Assembly (NCBI GenBank): GCA_001949185.1
Contig: BDGG01000001.1
Coordinates: 6,609,591-6,673,590 of the forward strand
Direction of reading: 5' to 3'
DNA length: 64,000 bases
Source: Ramazzottius varieornatus
Taxonomy: Eukaryota > Animalia > Tardigrada
This document shows, one piece after another, positions 33,832-42,290 of this stretch (position 1 is its first letter; each line of letters starts with the position of its first letter). A program made the translations under genes and the position numbers. Under the pieces are notes generated by a model, which was not told the DNA's origin, did not search any database, and worked only from the letters and a program-made list of their open reading frames with translations.

Positions 33832-35142
33832 TACGTGTACTGGTTAGGACAACCAGTTTCTCCTTGTCCGGATGGGTACATGGCTTACAGGCTCAACGTC
33901 AGGCTTAATTGCTCAGACATGCTCGTGGACCAGTTTTTAAAGCACTGTGTGGCCCTGTCCGCGAGACAAGAACCGCCCTCTGTTTTGTCAGTCTTTCCGC
34001 GCATTTTTAGGAAGGAGGTATCGGTGGTACTACTGGAACTGCATATGCTTGTCGGCATCTGGCGGACTGTCCGGTTAGGATGACCCTTGTTCTTGGAAAC
34101 TCGTCTTTGGGCATCGCACAAACTGAAATTATAGAAAACTGCAAGAAGGTTCGCGATGTCAACAAAGTACGCGAAGGCAGCCTTGACTGCTGGTTTTGTA
34201 CGGTAGGTCTTCGGCAATTTCGCTGTATGGTTTAGACAGCGGTATCGTTGCTGTGGACAAAGCTTAAGCGGCGCATAAAACAACCGTTTGATAAAACCGT
34301 TTCCCGCAGATGGCGTATATTAGTAGTATGGACCATACCTCTCAAGAGTCGAACACGCTTCAGAAGGGCGAACCACACATGGGAAGGAAACGAAACTGGA
34401 GATAATTGTCAGGTGTGATGGCTCAAAAGTCTGGATGCTTTCTCAATGGTAGAATGTATGGGTAAAGGCTTGGCTATGGGACAGGAGATGTTAGAAGACG
34501 TTAGTGTGCAAGGAACTTCGAAACACTGGATGGTTCGTTCAAGGACGGTGTCCACCTCAACGACATTCGTGCTCTCGACGGAATTCATTCTGCCGGTGTC
34601 CTCCTTCGATCACAACAGGACGTTCCGGGATTACAGGTTGATCTGATATGACTGGAATTTGCTCCCACGGGTCCACTCAGGCCTCCTGCGCATTCCGCAA
34701 ACTGCCCAAAGCAGGCCCCGTTGCCCAAGCGATCGGTAATGTGACTAAGCATCCACATAACGCTTTATGAGCAAGTTTCAGGACATTGCCAATGGCCTAA
34801 TATGCAGACAGTTGACGATAAATGCAAATTGAATGTTAATAAGTAAATGTTGAGCAAACTTACTGGTAAACCCAAAGCGTAAAAATGCATTTGAGTGGCA
34901 AAAACCATAACATAACCATGGCTATTTGCTCAATCATGCCCCACGTGTCGTACTTCAGGTATGAGAGAGTTTTTCTGTGACTTCTGCAGTTGGACAAATT
35001 TCTGGAAGAGAAATAGAGCACACGTTAATTATATGCTGTACAGAGTCAGCATACGTTTTCCCGATGAACACTTAAATCTCAGTATGTATACAGAGCAAAC
35101 AACTCGGCTCTCATTGTTGTCCAAAGTGGCGCATCTTTGCAC

Positions 35143-35811
35143 TCAAAATCTCCAAGAACGTGCGTCACTTAGTAGACCGACCTGGTCATGATAGTTTGCC
35201 GACCTCCCATATGATGCAGTGAACTTACTGAAAGCAAGGTTCTTGTAAAATCGGTCCTGTTTATTACCCATACGAGGTCCGAGCTTGAACGTGTTCTTGT
35301 GGTCGGGAAATTCTAGACCGAGGGCTTTTCCCACCGTCTTCTCGAACGATTTCCGGTTGTCAGTGGTTAGAGGTTCTTTGAGCTGCTCCGCGTAGTACGT
35401 CACAAGGCTTTTAGCCAGCAACCGACTGCCTGGCACAACTTCCAATGCGTTACGTATGACGCCACACGCTTCTGCAAATGCCATTCGTTCCCAGTCTCTC
35501 CTCTCACGTACGCGATTCTTGACTGGCTTCTTCTCACATTCCATCACAGCGTCGAATTCCTCGGGCAAATGCCGATCCGTTCCGGAGGCTGAGAGTTGAA
35601 TCCAGCTATTTTGAGAATCCGGATAACCATCCCATTTGCCGAAGTATTCCCAAGGAGAGCCCAAAACACTGGTCAGCTGTCGACGGTCCAAGACCTTCTC
35701 AACATAATACTCCTGGTGCTTGCGGTCAGCCTTTTGGTCACACTCGCTGGCAACGGAAGCTTCTTTCCCTTCAGTTTTTCCTTTCTTCTGTGCATCTGAA
35801 GATCTCTCCAT
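35143..35811 (-). CDS. Chromodomain + RFX-like winged-helix protein (222 aa), transposon-associated
   Basis: EYYVEKVLDRR...EYFGKWDGYPDSQNSWI is a chromodomain with aromatic-cage residues. VIRNALEVVPGSRLLAKSLVTYY...VGKALGLEFP...KLGPRMGNKQDRFYKNL resembles an RFX DNA-binding domain. Confidence 0.7.
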   Translation of the reverse strand: MERSSDAQKKGKTEGKEASVASECDQKADRKHQEYYVEKVLDRRQLTSVLGSPWEYFGKWDGYPDSQNSWIQLSASGTDRHLPEEFDAVMECEKKPVKNRVRERRDWERMAFAEACGVIRNALEVVPGSRLLAKSLVTYYAEQLKEPLTTDNRKSFEKTVGKALGLEFPDHKNTFKLGPRMGNKQDRFYKNLAFSKFTASYGRSANYHDQVGLLSDARSWRF

Positions 35812-36018
35812 TGTTCCATATTGAGGCAGAAAGACAGATTAACGACGGAAAGCTGCAGCAGAAGTAGGCGATCGTAGTTGAAACCAACTGAATGACCACT
35901 GTCCAACTATTGCACATTGGTAAGTTATATAGCCAAGCTCCAGTGTTAGACCCGAGCACTTGGCTTGTCTGTCCCATTACTGTATAGTGTTTGGCTGTGC
36001 TCTCTGTACGGGCAAAGC

Positions 36019-36081
36019 ACCCACTATGCTGCCATTGCTCACCCACAGTGGTGCAATTGCTGACCCATTCTGGTGCAATCC
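36019..36081 (+). repeat. Array of three 22-bp units (ACCCAYWSTGSTGCMAT); related copies at 38611-38628 (inverted) and 40863-40902 (2 units)
   Basis: Units start at 36019, 36041 and 36063; ACCCATTCTGGTGCA is exact at 36063, 40885 and (reverse strand) within 38611-38628. Confidence 0.85.
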
Positions 36082-36179
36082 GGTATGGGTCAGCAAGTCA
36101 CTTCGCAGTTCCGAATAACGCGAACAGCTTCCGATATTTTTCATTGGAGAGATGTTATTGGTATTATTCATTCATGTAG

Positions 36180-38970
36180 TCATGTAGATATTTGATGGCG
36201 GACCAAAATTATTCCTGAATCATCGTCGGACCAAGCCAGAAAAGCAACATGTTTTCGAAGATCGGAGGTAGGCAACAGAATATCTTCAGAAGGTCTAATA
36301 TAAAAGATATGAGGACACTCTGCCCTGAACAGCCCAGCAATTTTGTCTTCCATCTCATCCTCGTCCGGCTTTCTGAACAGTTTCGCATACACAAATGTGT
36401 GCAGAATATTTTTCTTCTCACAATCCATAACTGCTATGATCATGTCTATGTACATTACACGCTCGTTCACATCAGTAACAATGAACTCACTCTTCTGTTG
36501 CGACTGACTATGCTTTTTCGTTCTTACAACAATTCCCACTTCAGCCGCAGCTTTTCTGAAGCAGTGAACTCGGTCTCGCGACCAACATTCTTTCCTCCTC
36601 CTTCCTTCTCGTCTCACTTCCGCGTACGCTTCCCCGTCTTCGATCACATTAGATTGGCCACTCAACCGGCAAGTTCCGGCTGCTCCTTTGATGACGTAGG
36701 GTGATGCGGGCACTCCCATTAGTCTCTTTGCTGTTGTCACAATCTTGCTGTTTCCGAAACTCAGCATGTCTTCCATGCGTGCCGTGCACTCCTGCAGCTT
36801 TAGGAAACTGTCCATGATGTTCTTTGTGTGGTTGCAAATCTTGCGTGTTACTCGCCCTATCTCATTTTCCGGGCGATAGCAAGACGAAGGATGCAGCGGT
36901 CCGAAGCGTTCAATCGCGAGGGGCGAGTGGAGCATCAAATGAATAAAGTATTTCATTTGTTCGATCCCGAAATAGTCTTGGAAGGTTTTCACATATCTTG
37001 TGCATCTGCTCTCAATCTCCTTCAGAGATTCATGTGTGATCTCGTCGTGGGTGGCAAGCCACCCGATACGGCTCAGGAGACAGACGAGAAAGTAAAATCC
37101 CTCTGAACAGTTTCCCTTCAAGACGAAAGGTGCAGCGTGCTGTATGAAGAACTTGAGCTCGTGTGCCTTCCATGACTTGTAATCGTCCAGTGACCGCACA
37201 TTTCTGTTCTGATGGCCCGGTACAGCGACGGACATCCACAACCGCTCGATTACGTTCAGCTGCGCCCTGGTTGTTCCACTGTTACCATCGACAGTTATGA
37301 TCTGAGCGATTATCCATCGCACGACACCTTCATCAAACTGATGCATGATGTCCAGGAGGAAGGCCAGTACCACATCAAACTTATCCCAGAATCTGAGTAT
37401 CGCAGGTCTCCGAAAGCCTTTGGTCATTTTCTCCAGCCAGAAGAAACCTTTTCTCTTTCATGGTCATCTTTTCCCACTCTTCGGCGAAGTCGACGAAGTG
37501 CTGGTGAGTCTTCATTGCAACGTTTCTCGTGTACTGGTAACACATGCGGTGATTCATGCACTCTGCAACCTATGTAGAACAATTAATTTTATTCGGTGGG
37601 ATAATCACGATTTCTCGATTAACTGTGGTTTCTGTTGGTCCTGTTTGAGATATCCTTACCTGTAAACAGTAGATGCAACCTTCACCTGCGCTGTGGGAAA
37701 GATGACCGTTCAAGGCTGTTCGTTCAGGAGAGTCAGCCCAGATCGAGTGGACGCTTACACCGGAGCTCATCTGCACGTTCTCTTTTCTGGTCCACAGGAC
37801 TGGACGGAGACCGTCGTTTCCTTGCTGCAGTATCCGTAGCTGCCCTGTTAGGAAAAGCAGAAAGGCCTCTCTGTCCTTTGGTGGAGTCTCCCTACCCAAA
37901 CAAGTAGCATAGGCCACACGTTTGCTCTGAGTCGGATCGGGACATTTAGTACATGTACAAAAATGACGTACATCTTTCGGCTTGTACTTTCGCTCACTAA
38001 GGCCGTGTCGGCTCAAAGCTAGATGACCAAATCACGGTCTGCGGGGTTAATTTCGAGCCACCGTTGCCCATCGCAGACATCACGGAGAACTTTATCGCTG
38101 GATTTCTTTGTTTGGCTACTGCAGAAATTTCCGTAACGTTGCATAGTCGACGTTAATAGCTCATGCAATGGCTGAACCGAAAAGCAGTCCCCATCCTTCT
38201 CGATGCGCTTTCTGTCCCACTCGATATCGCAGACCTCACACACATATGTTCGGTTGGGTCCCTCATTCCGGACAGTCAAGGTGTATCCACATATCTCGTA
38301 GCTCGGAAGTTTATGTCCCCTCTTCTTAAACTCCGTTTTCTCCGGGCAAATATAAACCACGTGCTGCTTGTTGTGCCCAGGCTCTTCGCAGACGTAGGGA
38401 ATTTTATCCGTTTATCCACATCACTGGCGTGCCGTGGGGTGTTTATCACCAGAGAGAAGATCGCCATAAATTTATCCACGGTTGCATTGGATGTTCCGGA
38501 AGCCTTTGCAGCGTACATAATCATCATGCAGATTTGCTGTGTCCAACCGAGGACAGTGTGTTGTCCATCATCGTCTAAAAGACAGGATTACGTTCCTGCA
38601 AACAAAGACTGATTGCACCAGAATGGGTAAACCAGTGTGGCGCACTTTAGCACCGTTATGACACTAGCCCTGCGCAACTTTGAAAGGGGAACATGCATTC
38701 ACTTGCATTCCTGTGGCACTGCTCTCTTCTCTGGTCTCATCTTCGGAGTCCGTGCTGTCGGAATCCATGGAGAAACTGTCGTCGTCGAAGTTTTATCGAC
38801 AGTTGGATCACTGTTGGTAACCGCAACGTCCGACCTCCCAGGCAAGTCGTTCCGATTTCCTTTGCGAGGTAGTACTGTAGTGGAGATAACGTCTGGCTCG
38901 GTAGCTGACTTATGGCGTCCAGCTAATGAAACCTGGAGTTTGCTCAGTCGATCGCCTCTCCTGGCACGTA
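36180..38970 (-). pseudogene. CACTA/EnSpm (CMC) transposase, frameshifted, with introns
   Basis: YICPE...CEVC zinc cluster, DVCDGQRW, VLNVPIRLR..WPMLLVWVG, ADSPERTAL..H....GCIYC, LDIMHQFDEGV, SWKAHELKFF, IHLMLH..AIERFGPLH..SCYRPENEIG are conserved CACTA (Tnp2-type) motifs; stops and frameshifts around 37.4-38.4 kb. Confidence 0.85.
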
Positions 38971-39122
38971 AGAATGAATGACGCAGCTAATCAGACGCTG
39001 CGTACACTGCGTTCAACGTGCGTTCAGCACATTGCTGAATTATATTTCTAGAATAATTATGAACACCGAAATGAGCCGTTGAGAAACGGATCAGTTTTAA
39101 TCATCATTTCGGGCTACATCTG

Positions 39123-40830
39123 ATGAGGGAGGAAACAAGCCTGTCAGCCAAGAATTTGTCAGCCTTCCGACTCGAACACGGGATACTGGCCGTAAGTGTC
39201 TCTCTTTCTTTTGATGCGTTTTTAACAACAATCGAACTAGGGCTTGTTGTTCTAGTGACGGTCATTTTCCAGTACGACGATGACTACTACCACCTCCTTC
39301 CACCAAGCAAGATCTTTCCGGACAAGATTTTAGAAAGACACGATGAAGACATCAAGGAGAAGCAGCGGCATAAGAAAGAGCTTGAGCCAGGAATGAAGGT
39401 TCGTCTGTTTTGGACTGCTGCCTTCAACACGTCCAAAGCCACCGTCTACGCGGTGGGAGATAGCTTCAAAGACATGGGGCGACAGTTCACTGTGCTCGAA
39501 GAGGACCGAAAGAACAAGGGATGACGTCCAAGAACAAGAGATGACGTCCAAACGCAGTCGTCTTGTCAATCAAAGAGCAAGGAAAGAATGGAACAAGAGT
39601 GCATCTCCTCTGCACACCAGCAGCGACGAAACGGAGGAAGAAGACACTGACCTACAGTCACAACATTCGACAACAAAGATGTCCCGTCTTTCTCTTTTTC
39701 GGCCAAAGTCCATGAATAAACGATCCCCATCCCCTGTCTTCGCAGTCTCGAAGCCAGTGGACGGACGTCTTCTCTCTCCTACAAGCTCTGTTCATTCTTC
39801 TGAAGTGACAACAGTCAACAGTCCTGGTCCATCCGTTTCATATTTCCGTGATACAACCGGAGACCGCGGTATTGCTGTGATAAGTTATCAACCGGAACAC
39901 AAGAGCACACCGAAGAGGAATTATAAGATCCGGAAAATTTCACGGAAAACGAGTATTCGCCCAGCAAGGAGAAATGTTAGTAAACTTGATAATTCTAATA
40001 TGATGAATGATAAAATTGTTCACTGACAATGCTCATTGCAGACCGTGATAGCAATAGAGTTCATTCTGAAGATGGATACATGAACATGGCGGCGAAACAA
40101 AGATCAGGTTTGTGAATAAAACTAATTTCGACCACTTTAGTGGTACGGTAGCGTTTTGATTGCAATACTCTTCACAGCGCTGCGTTCGACCAGCCATCCG
40201 AGAGAAGTCACACCGACCAACCAAGTGGACGACGCCACAAAGGAAGCATGGGCCAAGAAGCGAGATATTTACAAGAAGAAATTTCAATGTATGCCCAGCC
40301 CATATTTCATATTTTAATTTTCTCGCAAAATAAGCTCCTGTCTTTCAGACTACCACAAGCTGCTGAAAATGAACGGAGCTGCAGGGAAGAACCGAAAGCC
40401 GATAGCCAAAGGTAACTCGATGTTCCACTGTTCTTTTCAAACAGCAGATCGTTTAGAATTCGCCTTGTATGATTGCCGCTGAGTTTTATGCTGCTGCACT
40501 CTTCAGATAGTATCTGCATATTGAGTTCAATACTGAATATTTCGTGCTGTTATAGTTCCCTTAATCAAATGGAAGTTCGAACGTGGACCGAAAGCCGATC
40601 GCGAAAGATTTCGTCGGTTAAGAAAGTCCGAGATGTGGGTGGACAAGAAAGGCTTAAGGAAGCTCCAGGAAAAATCCAAACACGCAACAGAGTACGCCCG
40701 GAAAGTCATGTTCCATCTGCTGATCACCAACGACGAAGTCATCTCGCTTTCGGAAATAAAGCCTGACGGTGTCGGGTTTGTGAAGTTGTTTGGACAAAAG
40801 AACTGGAATGCCTTCTACGGAAGTGCACGA
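39123..40830 (+). pseudogene. Divergent multi-exon transposon accessory gene with a putative C-terminal BEN-like domain, frameshifted
   Basis: N-terminal VIFQYDDDYYHLLPPSKI...LEPGMKVRLFW...ATVYAVGD, Ser-rich linker, then MWVDKKGLRKLQEKSKHATEYARKVMFHLLITNDEV, which resembles BEN helices; frameshift near 39520. Confidence 0.5.
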
Positions 40831-41114
40831 GTTTCTCTGCGCTTTCGTGTAGCGGCGGTTGGACCCACTCTGGTGCCAACGCACACCCATTCTGGTGCAC
40901 TCTCAATAAATCGGTACACTGGCGCTCCTCACTTAATATATTCGGTCTTCTTCCTCGCTGTACCGTCGAGGTCTCTTGGTTTAAACTGTTGAGACATACT
41001 CGAAAAGCCAGCCAAGATGGAAGCATGAACACCGGCGGATTTCTGGACACGAAAACAAACGACAAACTTACGAGATCCATTCAGAAGACTAACAGCTAAT
41101 ACAGCACACTGTAC

Positions 41115-41772
41115 CAATGTTTACGGTAGTTTTCACTGCGGTTGGAATCTACTACGTTACGTCGTATAGTTGGTTTCTGTCTCTTGCTTGCGTATAAAAT
41201 CTAGATTTGCCTTATTTTCCGCCTGATCCAAACTTTTTACTGCGCCAAACTTTCCCTTCGCGCGTCTACTGGCTCTTCGGTACTCGGTAAAGTAAGGTAT
41301 TTCGGCTCGCCTCGGAGGTGAAGTATCGTTATTTGGCAAAATCCACAGGTAATACCGCCGGTAAAGCACTGTCCAAGAACACTGAAAGTACGGCGAAAAG
41401 TATTTCGCGCACCTACTTTCGCCATAACGCTAACGTACAGTAGCTGCATGGGCTTCATAGTTCACAATGAGCGAGTGCGCACATGCGCTAGTTGGAGGAC
41501 GGTCGAACGTAGTACAGTGCCCTATATGAGCACTATGTTTGGGGCTCAAAAATGCTCATATTTCTGACAATTGGACGGAAGCGTCCAGTACTTTTGCGGT
41601 ACTTTCAATGATTACCGCCAGACTTCAGTACCCGTTATTACCGGGTAAATACCTGAAATACCTCCCGTAAGAAACAGGTGTCGCCTGTCGGTACTTAGTA
41701 GAGTACAAGTATTGCAAAATCGGTACTCAGTACAGGTATTACCGGGTAGTACCGGTATTTTGTTCAGCACTG
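41115..41772. mobile_element. hAT-like MITE remnant with TACCG/CGGTA subterminal repeats; left end uncertain
   Basis: Right end ...TTCAGCACTG (reverse complement CAGTGCTG); many TACCG motifs; shares TTACTTTACCGAGTAC with the insertion at ~20299-20314. Confidence 0.5.
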
Positions 41773-42290
41773 CTATCCCCGCCATGTAGCATTTACGGAC
41801 ATGAACCGTGATTGCGCGAAACCTTCGAAACCTTCGAAACCTTGCGTACTGTAAATATTCGATGCTATCGCGTAACACGTCATCGTACACGTGAGGTACA
41901 GCTTCTGTCCTGCTTTACTGCATGTTCCACCCCCTATGGAGTGCATCGTTGCGTACGTGTACGTACTGCGCGGACGTAGCCAAGGTTTTAGTGTATACCT
42001 GTAGCCGGTACATCGCTGATGCATCAACGCAATAGCGCAACAATCATGACGTAGCACGATCTGTCCGTCGTAATCGTTGCGCCTTCACCAAGTGTGCCAC
42101 ACTCGTTTCATAACGAAGGTTTGTCAAGCCGTACGGGCAACTTCCTGTATTGCCACCCGTTATCACTCACGCACTTTCTACCCGAACCATTTTGTTTTAT
42201 TTTTGTTATTTCCTTATAATTCGAAATAATTTTTATCTGAATTTTTCTGTACCATTTTACTTGGCATATAACACCCTGACTACCACCGTA

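What the first reader, a model, noticed from the sequence alone, without database searches (positions are those of the whole stretch)
35143..35811. Uninterrupted chromodomain + RFX-like winged-helix ORF just downstream of a CACTA transposase
Seen: a 222-aa open frame with a chromodomain (YYVEKVLDRR...EYFGKWDGYPDSQNSW, aromatic-cage Y/W/Y kept). It is followed by a segment that aligns by eye to the RFX DNA-binding fold (LEVVPGSRL...LVTYY...GKAL...FP...KLGPRMG.K...YKNL vs RFX YE..PG..L.R..LY..Y...FGK.I...FP...RLG.RG.SK..Y). Known: chromodomains read methyl-lysine and steer chromovirus integrases to heterochromatin, and RFX winged helices bind DNA. Inference: a transposon-borne reader coupling a histone mark to a DNA motif, for targeting or anti-silencing. 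It stays open while the adjacent transposase is broken, which is compatible with domestication.
Basis: partly seen in the sequence, partly recalled or inferred. Interest (0 to 1): 0.82.

Follow-up and report, generated by a model that had tools for sequence, protein, structure and literature searches.

The report
Transposon accessory gene: chromodomain plus RFX-like helix
The open frame is the second gene of a decaying DNA transposon in the tardigrade Ramazzottius varieornatus; it joins a histone-mark reader to an RFX-type DNA-binding fold, is typical of a whole clade of these transposons, and is not a domesticated host gene.

Summary
Window 35143-35811 (minus strand) is an open 222-aa frame with an HP1-type chromodomain and a C-terminal winged helix. 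The predicted fold of that helix matches RFX5 and RFX1 far better than any other solved winged helix (VIA Z 10.7 and 9.1; next 6.0). No sequence profile detects it as RFX.

The genome is Ramazzottius varieornatus. The ORF lies inside a roughly 6.8-kb CMC/CACTA-like DNA transposon with 14-bp inverted ends and a 3-bp target duplication. It starts 369 bp downstream of the transposase frame, on the same strand.

Chromodomain and/or winged-helix frames sit downstream of 11 of 13 distant transposase paralogues (33-47% identity). One family adds a RING finger. Two families carry their own 22-bp-period motif arrays just upstream of this gene.

Domestication is not supported:
- This copy lacks its 5' end.
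- The ORF is open only because a private 2-bp insertion joins an out-of-frame ATG to the chromodomain, replacing the conserved N-terminus.
- Its private substitutions look neutral (2 synonymous, 8 non-synonymous).
- The other four copies are also broken.

Best reading: a relic copy of a TnpA/VANC-like accessory protein that links element DNA to methylated chromatin. This is a new variant of a known kind.

The parts
34724..40957 (-). 5'-truncated copy of a roughly 6.8-kb CMC/CACTA-like DNA transposon (family A). Its sense strand is the window's minus strand.
   Evidence: Four other copies plus one deletion derivative at 88-94% nucleotide identity share these limits. Copies L014 and L016 extend 540 bp further 5' to the true end.
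34724..34737 (.). 3' terminal inverted repeat. It reads CCCAAGCGATCGGT on the plus strand, one mismatch from the family's CCCTAGCGATCGGT.
   Evidence: The same 14-mer lies at both ends of L014 and L016. L014 has a perfect 3-bp target duplication (CTG); L016 matches at 2 of 3 bases.
35143..35811 (-). ORF2 as it now stands: 222 aa, chromodomain plus winged helix.
35527..35715 (-). HP1-type chromodomain (residues about 33-95), with cage residues Y35, W59 and Y62.
   Evidence: The model shows three strands plus a helix.
35215..35499 (-). RFX-type winged helix (residues about 105-199).
   Evidence: The conserved F-P and T-x-K-L-G-x-R stretch aligns with the F-P and T-R-R-L-G-x-R of the host RFX domains.
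35734..35735 (-). Private 2-bp insertion (AA within an A run) that shifts the ancestral frame.
   Evidence: Absent from all four other copies.
35736..35819 (-). Ancestral start (ATG at 35817-35819) and the conserved N-terminal stretch with the K-G-K-x-L-P-L-P-A-S-V motif. In this copy it is out of frame with the chromodomain.
   Evidence: It is in frame in the other four copies and is homologous to the N-termini of P0001, P0014 and P0078.
36041..36077 (-). Two units of the family motif TGCACCAGAATGGGT, spaced 22 bp apart, 230-270 bp upstream of ORF2.
   Evidence: All 9 exact copies in the genome lie inside family A elements.
36180..37427 (-). C-terminal half of the transposase (415-aa frame).
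   Evidence: Weak but repeated DUF4218 hits across the family (best 5.3e-5), and a Plavaka hit at 1.4e-4 in the Hypsibius homologue. Private 1-bp deletion near 36204.
37434..37434 (-). Private 1-bp insertion that frameshifts the transposase.
   Evidence: Absent from L013, L014 and L015.
37573..38411 (-). N-terminal and catalytic pieces of the transposase, lying in two frames.
   Evidence: DUF1258 at E 0.12 here and 7.2e-4 in paralogue L025.
38614..38628 (+). One inverted copy of the family motif, just upstream of the transposase coding region.
40863..40899 (-). Two units of the family motif, spaced 22 bp apart, about 600 bp from the true 5' end of the element.

Best explanation
ORF2 is the accessory (second) gene of a tardigrade CMC/CACTA-like DNA transposon, seen here in a dead copy.

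Shown:
- It lies inside the element, on the transposase strand, between the transposase and the 3' inverted repeat.
- It encodes an HP1-type chromodomain with an intact aromatic cage, followed by a winged helix whose predicted fold is of the RFX type.
- The same module recurs downstream of most distant transposase paralogues in this genome: winged helix alone, chromodomain plus winged helix, or RING plus chromodomain plus winged helix.
- Two families carry their own tandem motif at a fixed 22-bp spacing just upstream of this gene.

Inferred: like TnpA of En/Spm or VANC of VANDAL elements, the winged helix binds the element's own family-specific motif arrays, while the chromodomain binds methylated H3 tails. 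The protein would then tie element DNA to repressive chromatin. That could steer insertion to heterochromatin, or it could recognise and regulate (de-repress) silenced copies of its own family.

The window copy itself is a relic. It has lost its 5' end, its transposase is frameshifted, and its N-terminus is replaced by a frameshift.
For: Identity and position:
- The genome is R. varieornatus.
- ORF2 lies inside all five copies of the repeat.
- Inverted ends and target duplication were found.
- The transposase has repeated weak DUF4218, DUF1258 and Plavaka hits, and Atlas neighbours at 0.97, one of them a DUF4218 cluster.
- A curated tardigrade repeat library lists CMC elements (PMC11071193).

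Domains:
- Chromodomain.
- RFX-type fold.

Conservation:
- A 184-aa homologue at 30% identity (P0019) keeps both domains.
- The winged-helix HMM hits same-strand downstream frames at 8 of 13 paralogue loci.
- A chromodomain lies downstream at 8 of 13 loci, and either domain at 11 of 13.
- Family D combines RING and chromodomain.

Motif arrays.

Relic status.

Precedents: VANC targets form family-specific tandem repeats (PMC5735166). Chromo domains have been captured by DNA transposons before (10.1101/2021.11.30.470311).
Against: - No binding, expression or insertion-site data exist. The link between the winged helix and the 22-bp arrays is positional only; the transposase or another element protein could bind them instead.
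- The arrays are internal and promoter-proximal, not subterminal, so a role in transpososome assembly is less likely than regulation.
- The RFX assignment rests on predicted structures built from shallow alignments (7-9 sequences).
- No Pfam RFX signal was found.
- Classification of the transposase rests on sub-threshold hits.
- In family D the chromodomain cage is partly degenerate.
Confidence: 0.78

Rival explanations
1. This copy of ORF2 has been domesticated. The host keeps it open as a chromatin or transcription factor while the rest of the element decays.
For: It is the only one of five copies without a stop or an internal frameshift in the chromodomain and winged-helix part. NCBI has a gene model over it, RvY_02393.
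Against: - A private 2-bp insertion removes the conserved N-terminus, and the frame is rescued only by an out-of-frame ATG.
- Private substitutions are 2 synonymous to 8 non-synonymous, against a neutral 1:3.6.
- Copy L015 has only one stop, so one open copy among five is unremarkable.
- Lesion density is about equal to that of the transposase.
- The gene model splices through the non-ancestral frame and ends in an exon outside the element.
Confidence: 0.05
2. Chromodomain and winged helix are not a separate protein. They are spliced onto the transposase as its C-terminal targeting module, as in chromoviral integrases.
For: The NCBI model RvY_02393 joins transposase residues 1-311 to ORF2. The arrangement is same-strand and tightly linked in every family. 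In L025 the chromodomain is in frame with the transposase.
Against: - ORF2 has its own conserved ATG and N-terminus in families A, D and E and in the free-standing homologues P0019, P0078 and P0014.
- The transposase has a conserved C-terminus followed by a stop (S-P-P-S-N-I/M-Y-M-T-T), also present in a 55%-identical homologue.
- The L025 fusion is a deletion that removes the first chromodomain strand.
- The gene model is a prediction, and it skips about 100 conserved transposase residues.
Confidence: 0.1
3. The winged helix is a generic winged helix, or the P4/D5 primase origin-binding type, and the RFX resemblance is incidental. Alternatively it is a non-functional fragment captured from a host RFX gene.
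For: - No PF02257 hit at E<=1, while 8 true RFX domains in the same genome score 28.8-70 bits.
- hhalign probability is only 4-8%.
- P4 origin-binding domain and viral primase-helicase C-terminal domains appear among the fold hits.
- The Atlas lead points to Pox_D5 clusters at only 0.79.
Against: - RFX5 and RFX1 stand more than 3 Z units above every other chain and are the top two Foldseek hits.
- The weak profile alignment falls in the structurally expected register, with F-P and T-x-[KR]-L-G-x-R shared.
- The domain is conserved across transposon families down to about 20% identity, so it is not a recent dead capture.
Confidence: 0.07

Closest known systems
TnpA of maize En/Spm (CACTA) elements
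   Same: A second, non-catalytic DNA-binding protein encoded by a CACTA-superfamily transposon alongside the transposase. It binds short repeated motifs inside its own element and is linked to epigenetic regulation of the element. This is established knowledge and was not tested here.
   Different: No sequence similarity was found. Here the fold is an RFX-type winged helix with a chromodomain. The motif arrays are internal and promoter-proximal at a fixed 22-bp spacing, not subterminal. It appears to be a separate gene rather than an alternative splice form.
VANC anti-silencing proteins of Arabidopsis VANDAL (Mutator) elements (PMC5735166)
   Same: A transposon-encoded accessory protein acting on non-coding regions of its own family. 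Its targets form tandem repeats that differ between related families. That is the pattern seen for the family A and family E arrays.
   Different: A different superfamily, kingdom and protein fold. VANC has no chromodomain, and its effect is loss of DNA methylation. Function here is untested.
Chromodomains of chromovirus (Ty3/Gypsy) integrases, and Chromo fusions to DNA transposons (10.1101/2021.11.30.470311)
   Same: A mobile element has recruited an HP1-like methyl-lysine reader. The known role is tethering integration to H3K9me chromatin. Fusions of hAT transposons with CBX/CDY-type Chromo domains are reported in a sponge.
   Different: It is fused to a separate putative sequence-specific DNA-binding domain, and in one family also to a RING finger. 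The superfamily is CMC and the host is a tardigrade.
RFX DNA-binding domain (PF02257; RFX1 1dp7, RFX5 8zjr)
   Same: The predicted fold superposes over nearly the whole domain (Z 10.7 and 9.1). It shares F-P before the wing and T-x-[KR]-L-G-x-R in the wing.
   Different: It is below detection by the Pfam profile. Identity in the structural alignments is 15-24%. There is no RFX dimerisation or activation region. It is encoded by a transposon, and the candidate target motif does not resemble an X-box.
Origin-binding winged helix of phage P4 alpha and D5-type primase-helicases (1ka8)
   Same: The same broad winged-helix subtype, also carried by mobile elements and viruses.
   Different: A much weaker match (Z 5.9; BFVD TM 0.4-0.5), and no primase or helicase context.

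Membership tests
Chromodomain (PF00385, HP1/CBX type) | Match to the Pfam profile at or above the gathering score | tested here: inconclusive
   The window protein scores 22.9 bits against a 25.1 cut-off, E 8.3e-5. Its relatives pass: P0078 41.9, P0019 25.9, family E 52.6 and 47.4 bits. The family profile against PDB HP1 gives 1e-9 over the full domain.
Chromodomain (PF00385, HP1/CBX type) | Three-residue aromatic cage for methyl-lysine (HP1 Y24, W45, Y48; established knowledge) | tested here: met
   The HMMER alignment to 1kna places Y35, W59 and Y62 on those positions. In family D the cage is degenerate (F, W, C).
Chromodomain (PF00385, HP1/CBX type) | Three-stranded sheet packed against a C-terminal helix | tested here: met
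   The model has strands 36-45, 54-61 and 69-72 and helix 85-92, but pLDDT is only 55-69. Foldseek hits HP1, Rhino and CBX chromodomains.
Chromodomain (PF00385, HP1/CBX type) | Binds methylated H3 peptides | not testable with these tools
   Needs a peptide pull-down or ITC.
RFX DNA-binding domain (PF02257) | Match to the Pfam profile | tested here: not met
   No hit at E<=1 by hmmscan. A genome-wide PF02257 search finds 8 host RFX domains but none of the ORF2 copies.
RFX DNA-binding domain (PF02257) | Profile-profile similarity to RFX domains | tested here: inconclusive
   hhalign against five host RFX domains gives E 0.0045-0.01 and Prob 4-8%, over 51-52 columns in the structurally expected register.
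RFX DNA-binding domain (PF02257) | RFX-type winged-helix fold (H1-S1-H2-H3-S2-wing-S3) | tested here: met
   VIA gives Z 10.7 (RFX5) and 9.1 (RFX1), with the next chain at 6.0. These are the top two Foldseek hits. This rests on a predicted structure only.
RFX DNA-binding domain (PF02257) | Binds an X-box through the wing | not testable with these tools
   The candidate site TGCACCAGAATGGGT is not X-box-like. Needs EMSA or SELEX.
CACTA/CMC superfamily DNA transposon | Transposase homologous to the CMC DDE transposases | tested here: inconclusive
   Only sub-threshold but repeated hits: DUF4218 (best 5.3e-5), DUF1258 (7.2e-4) and Plavaka (1.4e-4). An Atlas neighbour cluster carries DUF4218. No hit to Transposase_21.
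CACTA/CMC superfamily DNA transposon | Terminal inverted repeats with a 2-3-bp target duplication | tested here: met
   14-bp inverted repeats. The duplication is CTG/CTG in L014 and TTT/ATT in L016. Only two copies have both ends.
CACTA/CMC superfamily DNA transposon | Termini beginning CACTA/CACTG (CACTA in the strict sense) | tested here: not met
   The termini read CCCTAGCGATCGGT.

The most novel reading that the evidence does not exclude
A clade of animal DNA transposons encodes a modular accessory protein: an RFX-type winged helix, with or without a chromodomain and a RING finger. It would recognise both its own family-specific 22-bp-period DNA arrays and H3K9me-type chromatin. On this reading it acts as a sequence-specific anti-silencing or heterochromatin-targeting factor that co-evolves with its sites, an animal counterpart of plant TnpA/VANC. 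It would also hint that the RFX DNA-binding fold circulates among mobile elements and viruses.
Probability: 0.3. Interest if true: 0.75.

Novelty: new variant of a known kind. Interest (0 to 1): 0.55.

Why it matters
Transposons are known to borrow chromatin readers and to carry accessory DNA-binding proteins. The well-studied cases are retrotransposon integrases and plant elements. Here an animal cut-and-paste transposon clade pairs a methyl-lysine reader with an RFX-type DNA-binding fold in a separate protein. Each family has its own tandem candidate binding sites at a fixed spacing.

That gives a compact, testable system: one small protein, a 15-bp motif and a 56-Mb genome. It could be used to ask how DNA transposons choose or escape heterochromatin in animals. 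It also adds a transposon-borne relative to the RFX-type fold.

For annotation, RvY_02393 and the similar 'chromo domain' and 'RING-type' models in this genome are transposon genes, not host genes.

Tried and rejected
- Domestication was rejected on the 2-bp insertion, the neutral private substitutions and the truncated element.
- I first took the repeat limits 34723 and 40957 as the element's ends and found no inverted repeat there. The true 5' end lies 540 bp further out in other copies.
- I first counted the TAG at 37570-37572 as a transposase lesion. It is shared by three of four copies and sits in an intron-like stretch, so I dropped it.
- The in-frame transposase-chromodomain fusion in L025 turned out to be a deletion.
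- A profile of the C-terminal domain against PDB sequences gave only chance HSP90 hits.
- The Atlas search on the winged helix gave scores of 0.79-0.81, which are leads only.
- The word-based protein searches found only proteins of this genome.
- The metagenome scan with the transposase alignment found nothing. A second scan with the ORF2 alignment could not be built.
- The Chromo_shadow search of this genome was blank, but its control was uninformative.
Intron-split ORF2s of families D and E were examined exon by exon, by reference.

Full report
**Where we are.** The ORF's only close database hit, and the transposase's close hits, are Ramazzottius varieornatus proteins RvY_02118, RvY_02119 and RvY_02393. 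The window maps to contig C1:6609591-6673590 of a 55.8-Mb, 200-contig assembly. This is a tardigrade genome, not human and not viral.

**The observation.** Window 35143-35811 is an ATG-initiated open frame of 222 aa on the minus strand.
- Pfam Chromo matches residues 35-71 at E 8.3e-5 and 22.9 bits, just under the 25.1-bit cut-off.
- phmmer against PDB puts Drosophila HP1 first at 6.3e-6. The alignment places Y35, W59 and Y62 on HP1's three cage residues.
- A profile of the family raises HP1 to 1e-9 over the whole chromodomain.

For the C-terminal part, no sequence method sees RFX:
- hmmscan finds nothing at E<=1.
- A genome-wide PF02257 search finds eight host RFX domains but none of the ORF2 copies.
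- A profile against PDB sequences gives only chance hits.

Structure tells a different story:
- AlphaFold2 on residues 105-222 with a 7-sequence alignment gives pLDDT about 85 over the first 95 residues and an H-S-H-H-S-S winged helix. The full-length model agrees.
- Foldseek against PDB ranks RFX5 (8zjr_M, E 2.5e-4, TM 0.68) and RFX1 (1dp7_P, 4.2e-3) first and second. The next hit is at 5.5e-2.
- VIA-align 2 against 48,161 representative chains, independently of Foldseek, gives RFX5 Z 10.7 (rmsd 2.3 A over 80 of 82 residues) and RFX1 Z 9.1. The next are Z 6.0 (Cdt1) and 5.9 (phage P4 origin-binding domain).
- Viral models give weaker matches to C-terminal domains of P4/D5-type primase-helicases.

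**It is a gene of a transposon.** A 12-kb query finds four more copies and one internally deleted derivative at 88-94% nucleotide identity. The shared unit is window 34724-40957, with the minus strand as sense.
- Copies L014 and L016 extend 540 bp further 5'.
- They end in 14-bp inverted repeats (CCCTAGCGATCGGT), with a 3-bp target duplication that is perfect in L014 and matches 2 of 3 bases in L016.
- The full element is about 6.8 kb. The window copy has lost its 5' end, where MITE-like repeats now abut it.
- ORF2 starts 369 bp downstream of the 415-aa transposase frame (36180-37427), and its stop lies about 420 bp inside the 3' inverted repeat.

The transposase family gives sub-threshold but repeated hits to DUF4218 (best 5.3e-5), DUF1258 (7.2e-4) and Plavaka (1.4e-4). 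Its Atlas neighbours at 0.97 are fungal and arthropod clusters, one of which carries DUF4218. A curated tardigrade repeat library lists CMC elements (PMC11071193). I therefore call it CMC/CACTA-like; its termini are not CACTA.

**The module is a family trait.** The exhaustive HMMER search found few relatives, all unnamed and on short ENA or Logan contigs. They include P0019, a 184-aa protein at 30% identity that keeps both the chromodomain (25.9 bits) and the winged helix.

Within the genome, the transposase has 13 more loci at 33-47% identity. I fetched them.
- An HMM of the winged helix finds a frame downstream on the transposase strand at 8 of the 13. E-values are 5.7e-37 for L018 (part of the HMM's seed alignment) and 2.6e-13 for L035, then between 4.6e-4 and 6.5e-3 for the other six. 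The weak ones are credible because position and strand always agree.
- Chromodomains lie between transposase and winged helix at 8 of the 13. Either domain is present at 11 of the 13.
- Family E has a Pfam-passing chromodomain (52.6 bits), with an intron between the first helix and the rest of the winged helix.
- Family D has a complete RING finger and a chromodomain in one frame, followed by a winged-helix exon.
- Families B and C show only the winged helix.

The winged helix is thus the constant part, and the chromatin-facing modules vary.

**Candidate DNA targets.** The 15-mer TGCACCAGAATGGGT occurs five times in the element:
- as pairs 22 bp apart at 36041-36077, just upstream of ORF2;
- as pairs 22 bp apart at 40863-40899;
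- once inverted at 38614-38628, upstream of the transposase.

Shuffles of the window never reach this count. The layout is kept in the other copies. All nine exact genomic copies lie in family A elements.

Family E has a different motif, CGTCGCAGTCCGATG, at the same 22-bp spacing and the same place. It has two units in L026 and L029, 19 units in L036, and inverted copies upstream. Family-specific tandem targets in non-coding parts of the element are what VANC proteins of Arabidopsis VANDALs bind (PMC5735166). That the winged helix binds these arrays is my inference. Nothing here shows it.

**Not domesticated.**
- All four other copies lack two bases that the window has at 35734-35735. In those copies the frame starts at an ATG corresponding to 35817-35819 and encodes a conserved N-terminus (K-G-K-x-L-P-L-P-A-S-V), also seen in P0014 and P0078. 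In the window, that start is out of frame, and a different ATG (35811) reads the same DNA in another frame for 26 codons before the insertion restores the chromodomain frame. The 'uninterrupted' ORF is therefore a frameshifted gene rescued by chance.
- Private substitutions of the window copy are 2 synonymous and 8 non-synonymous, against 145 synonymous and 521 non-synonymous sites. That is neutral, and the other copies look the same.
- The window transposase has two private frameshifts, near 37434 and 36204. One lesion in 0.67 kb against two in about 2.4 kb shows no sparing of ORF2.
- Copy L015 has a single stop.
- NCBI model RvY_02393 splices transposase residues 1-311 to the non-ancestral ORF2 frame and then to an exon outside the element. 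It is a prediction and carries no weight.

**Mechanism.**
- Shown: the architecture, its linkage to the transposase, and its conservation.
- Inferred: an accessory protein that binds the element's own arrays and methylated nucleosomes.

Two outcomes are possible and I cannot separate them.
- Targeting of insertion to repressive chromatin, as with chromoviral integrases. Eleven of 18 transposase loci lie on contig C1, which is 16.7% of the genome (binomial P 2.8e-5). Local hopping would give the same pattern.
- Recognition and regulation of silenced copies of its own family, as with TnpA or VANC. The promoter-proximal position of the arrays favours this outcome slightly.

**Novelty.** Capture of Chromo readers by DNA transposons is documented (10.1101/2021.11.30.470311), and CACTA and Mutator accessory proteins are classical. 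In the library searched I found no report of either of these:
- an RFX-type winged helix in a eukaryotic transposon accessory protein;
- a chromodomain-winged-helix or RING-chromodomain-winged-helix gene in CMC elements.

I rate this a new variant of a known kind.

**Limits.**
Linkage outside this genome is therefore untested.
- The structures are predictions from shallow alignments.

Noticed in passing
L036:7619-8029 (G000:C1:6466618-6467028): The family E 22-bp motif is expanded to 19 head-to-tail units between the transposase and the chromodomain exon. Sister copies L026 and L029 have only two units.
   Followed up: partly
L031:4936-5586 (-) and L034:7897-8460 (+); gene models P0080, P0083: In transposon family D the accessory gene has a complete RING finger fused to a chromodomain with a degenerate cage, followed by the winged-helix exon. 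NCBI annotates these as RING-type host proteins.
   Followed up: partly
window 39123-39524 (+) and 39541-40026 (+): Two open frames of 133 and 161 aa lie antisense to the transposase inside the element. Another first-reader note calls them BEN-like. Pfam finds nothing at E<=1.
   Followed up: partly
window 40949-41271 and 41267-41774: High-copy short repeats, one with about 50-bp inverted ends at its other genomic copies (MITE-like), abut the truncated 5' end of the element.
   Followed up: no
G000:C2:602288-603327 and six other places: Eight PF02257 (RFX DNA-binding) matches over the cut-off in a 56-Mb genome, including a tandem pair 0.8 kb apart. That seems many for a small invertebrate genome.
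   Followed up: no
L036:3557-4657 (+): A Tc5/pogo-type DDE_1 transposase frame (E 5.3e-20) sits next to a family E copy, apparently a nested or neighbouring second transposon.
   Followed up: no
G000 contig C1: Eleven of 18 loci of this transposase clade lie on contig C1 (16.7% of the genome), mostly at 0.3-0.4 Mb and 5.1-8.3 Mb (binomial P 2.8e-5). This could reflect a repeat-rich region, local hopping or targeting.
   Followed up: partly
window 37563-37590 (-): A TAG shared by three of four copies sits in a pyrimidine-rich stretch ending in CAG, which looks like the 3' end of a short intron in the transposase gene rather than a lesion.
   Followed up: no
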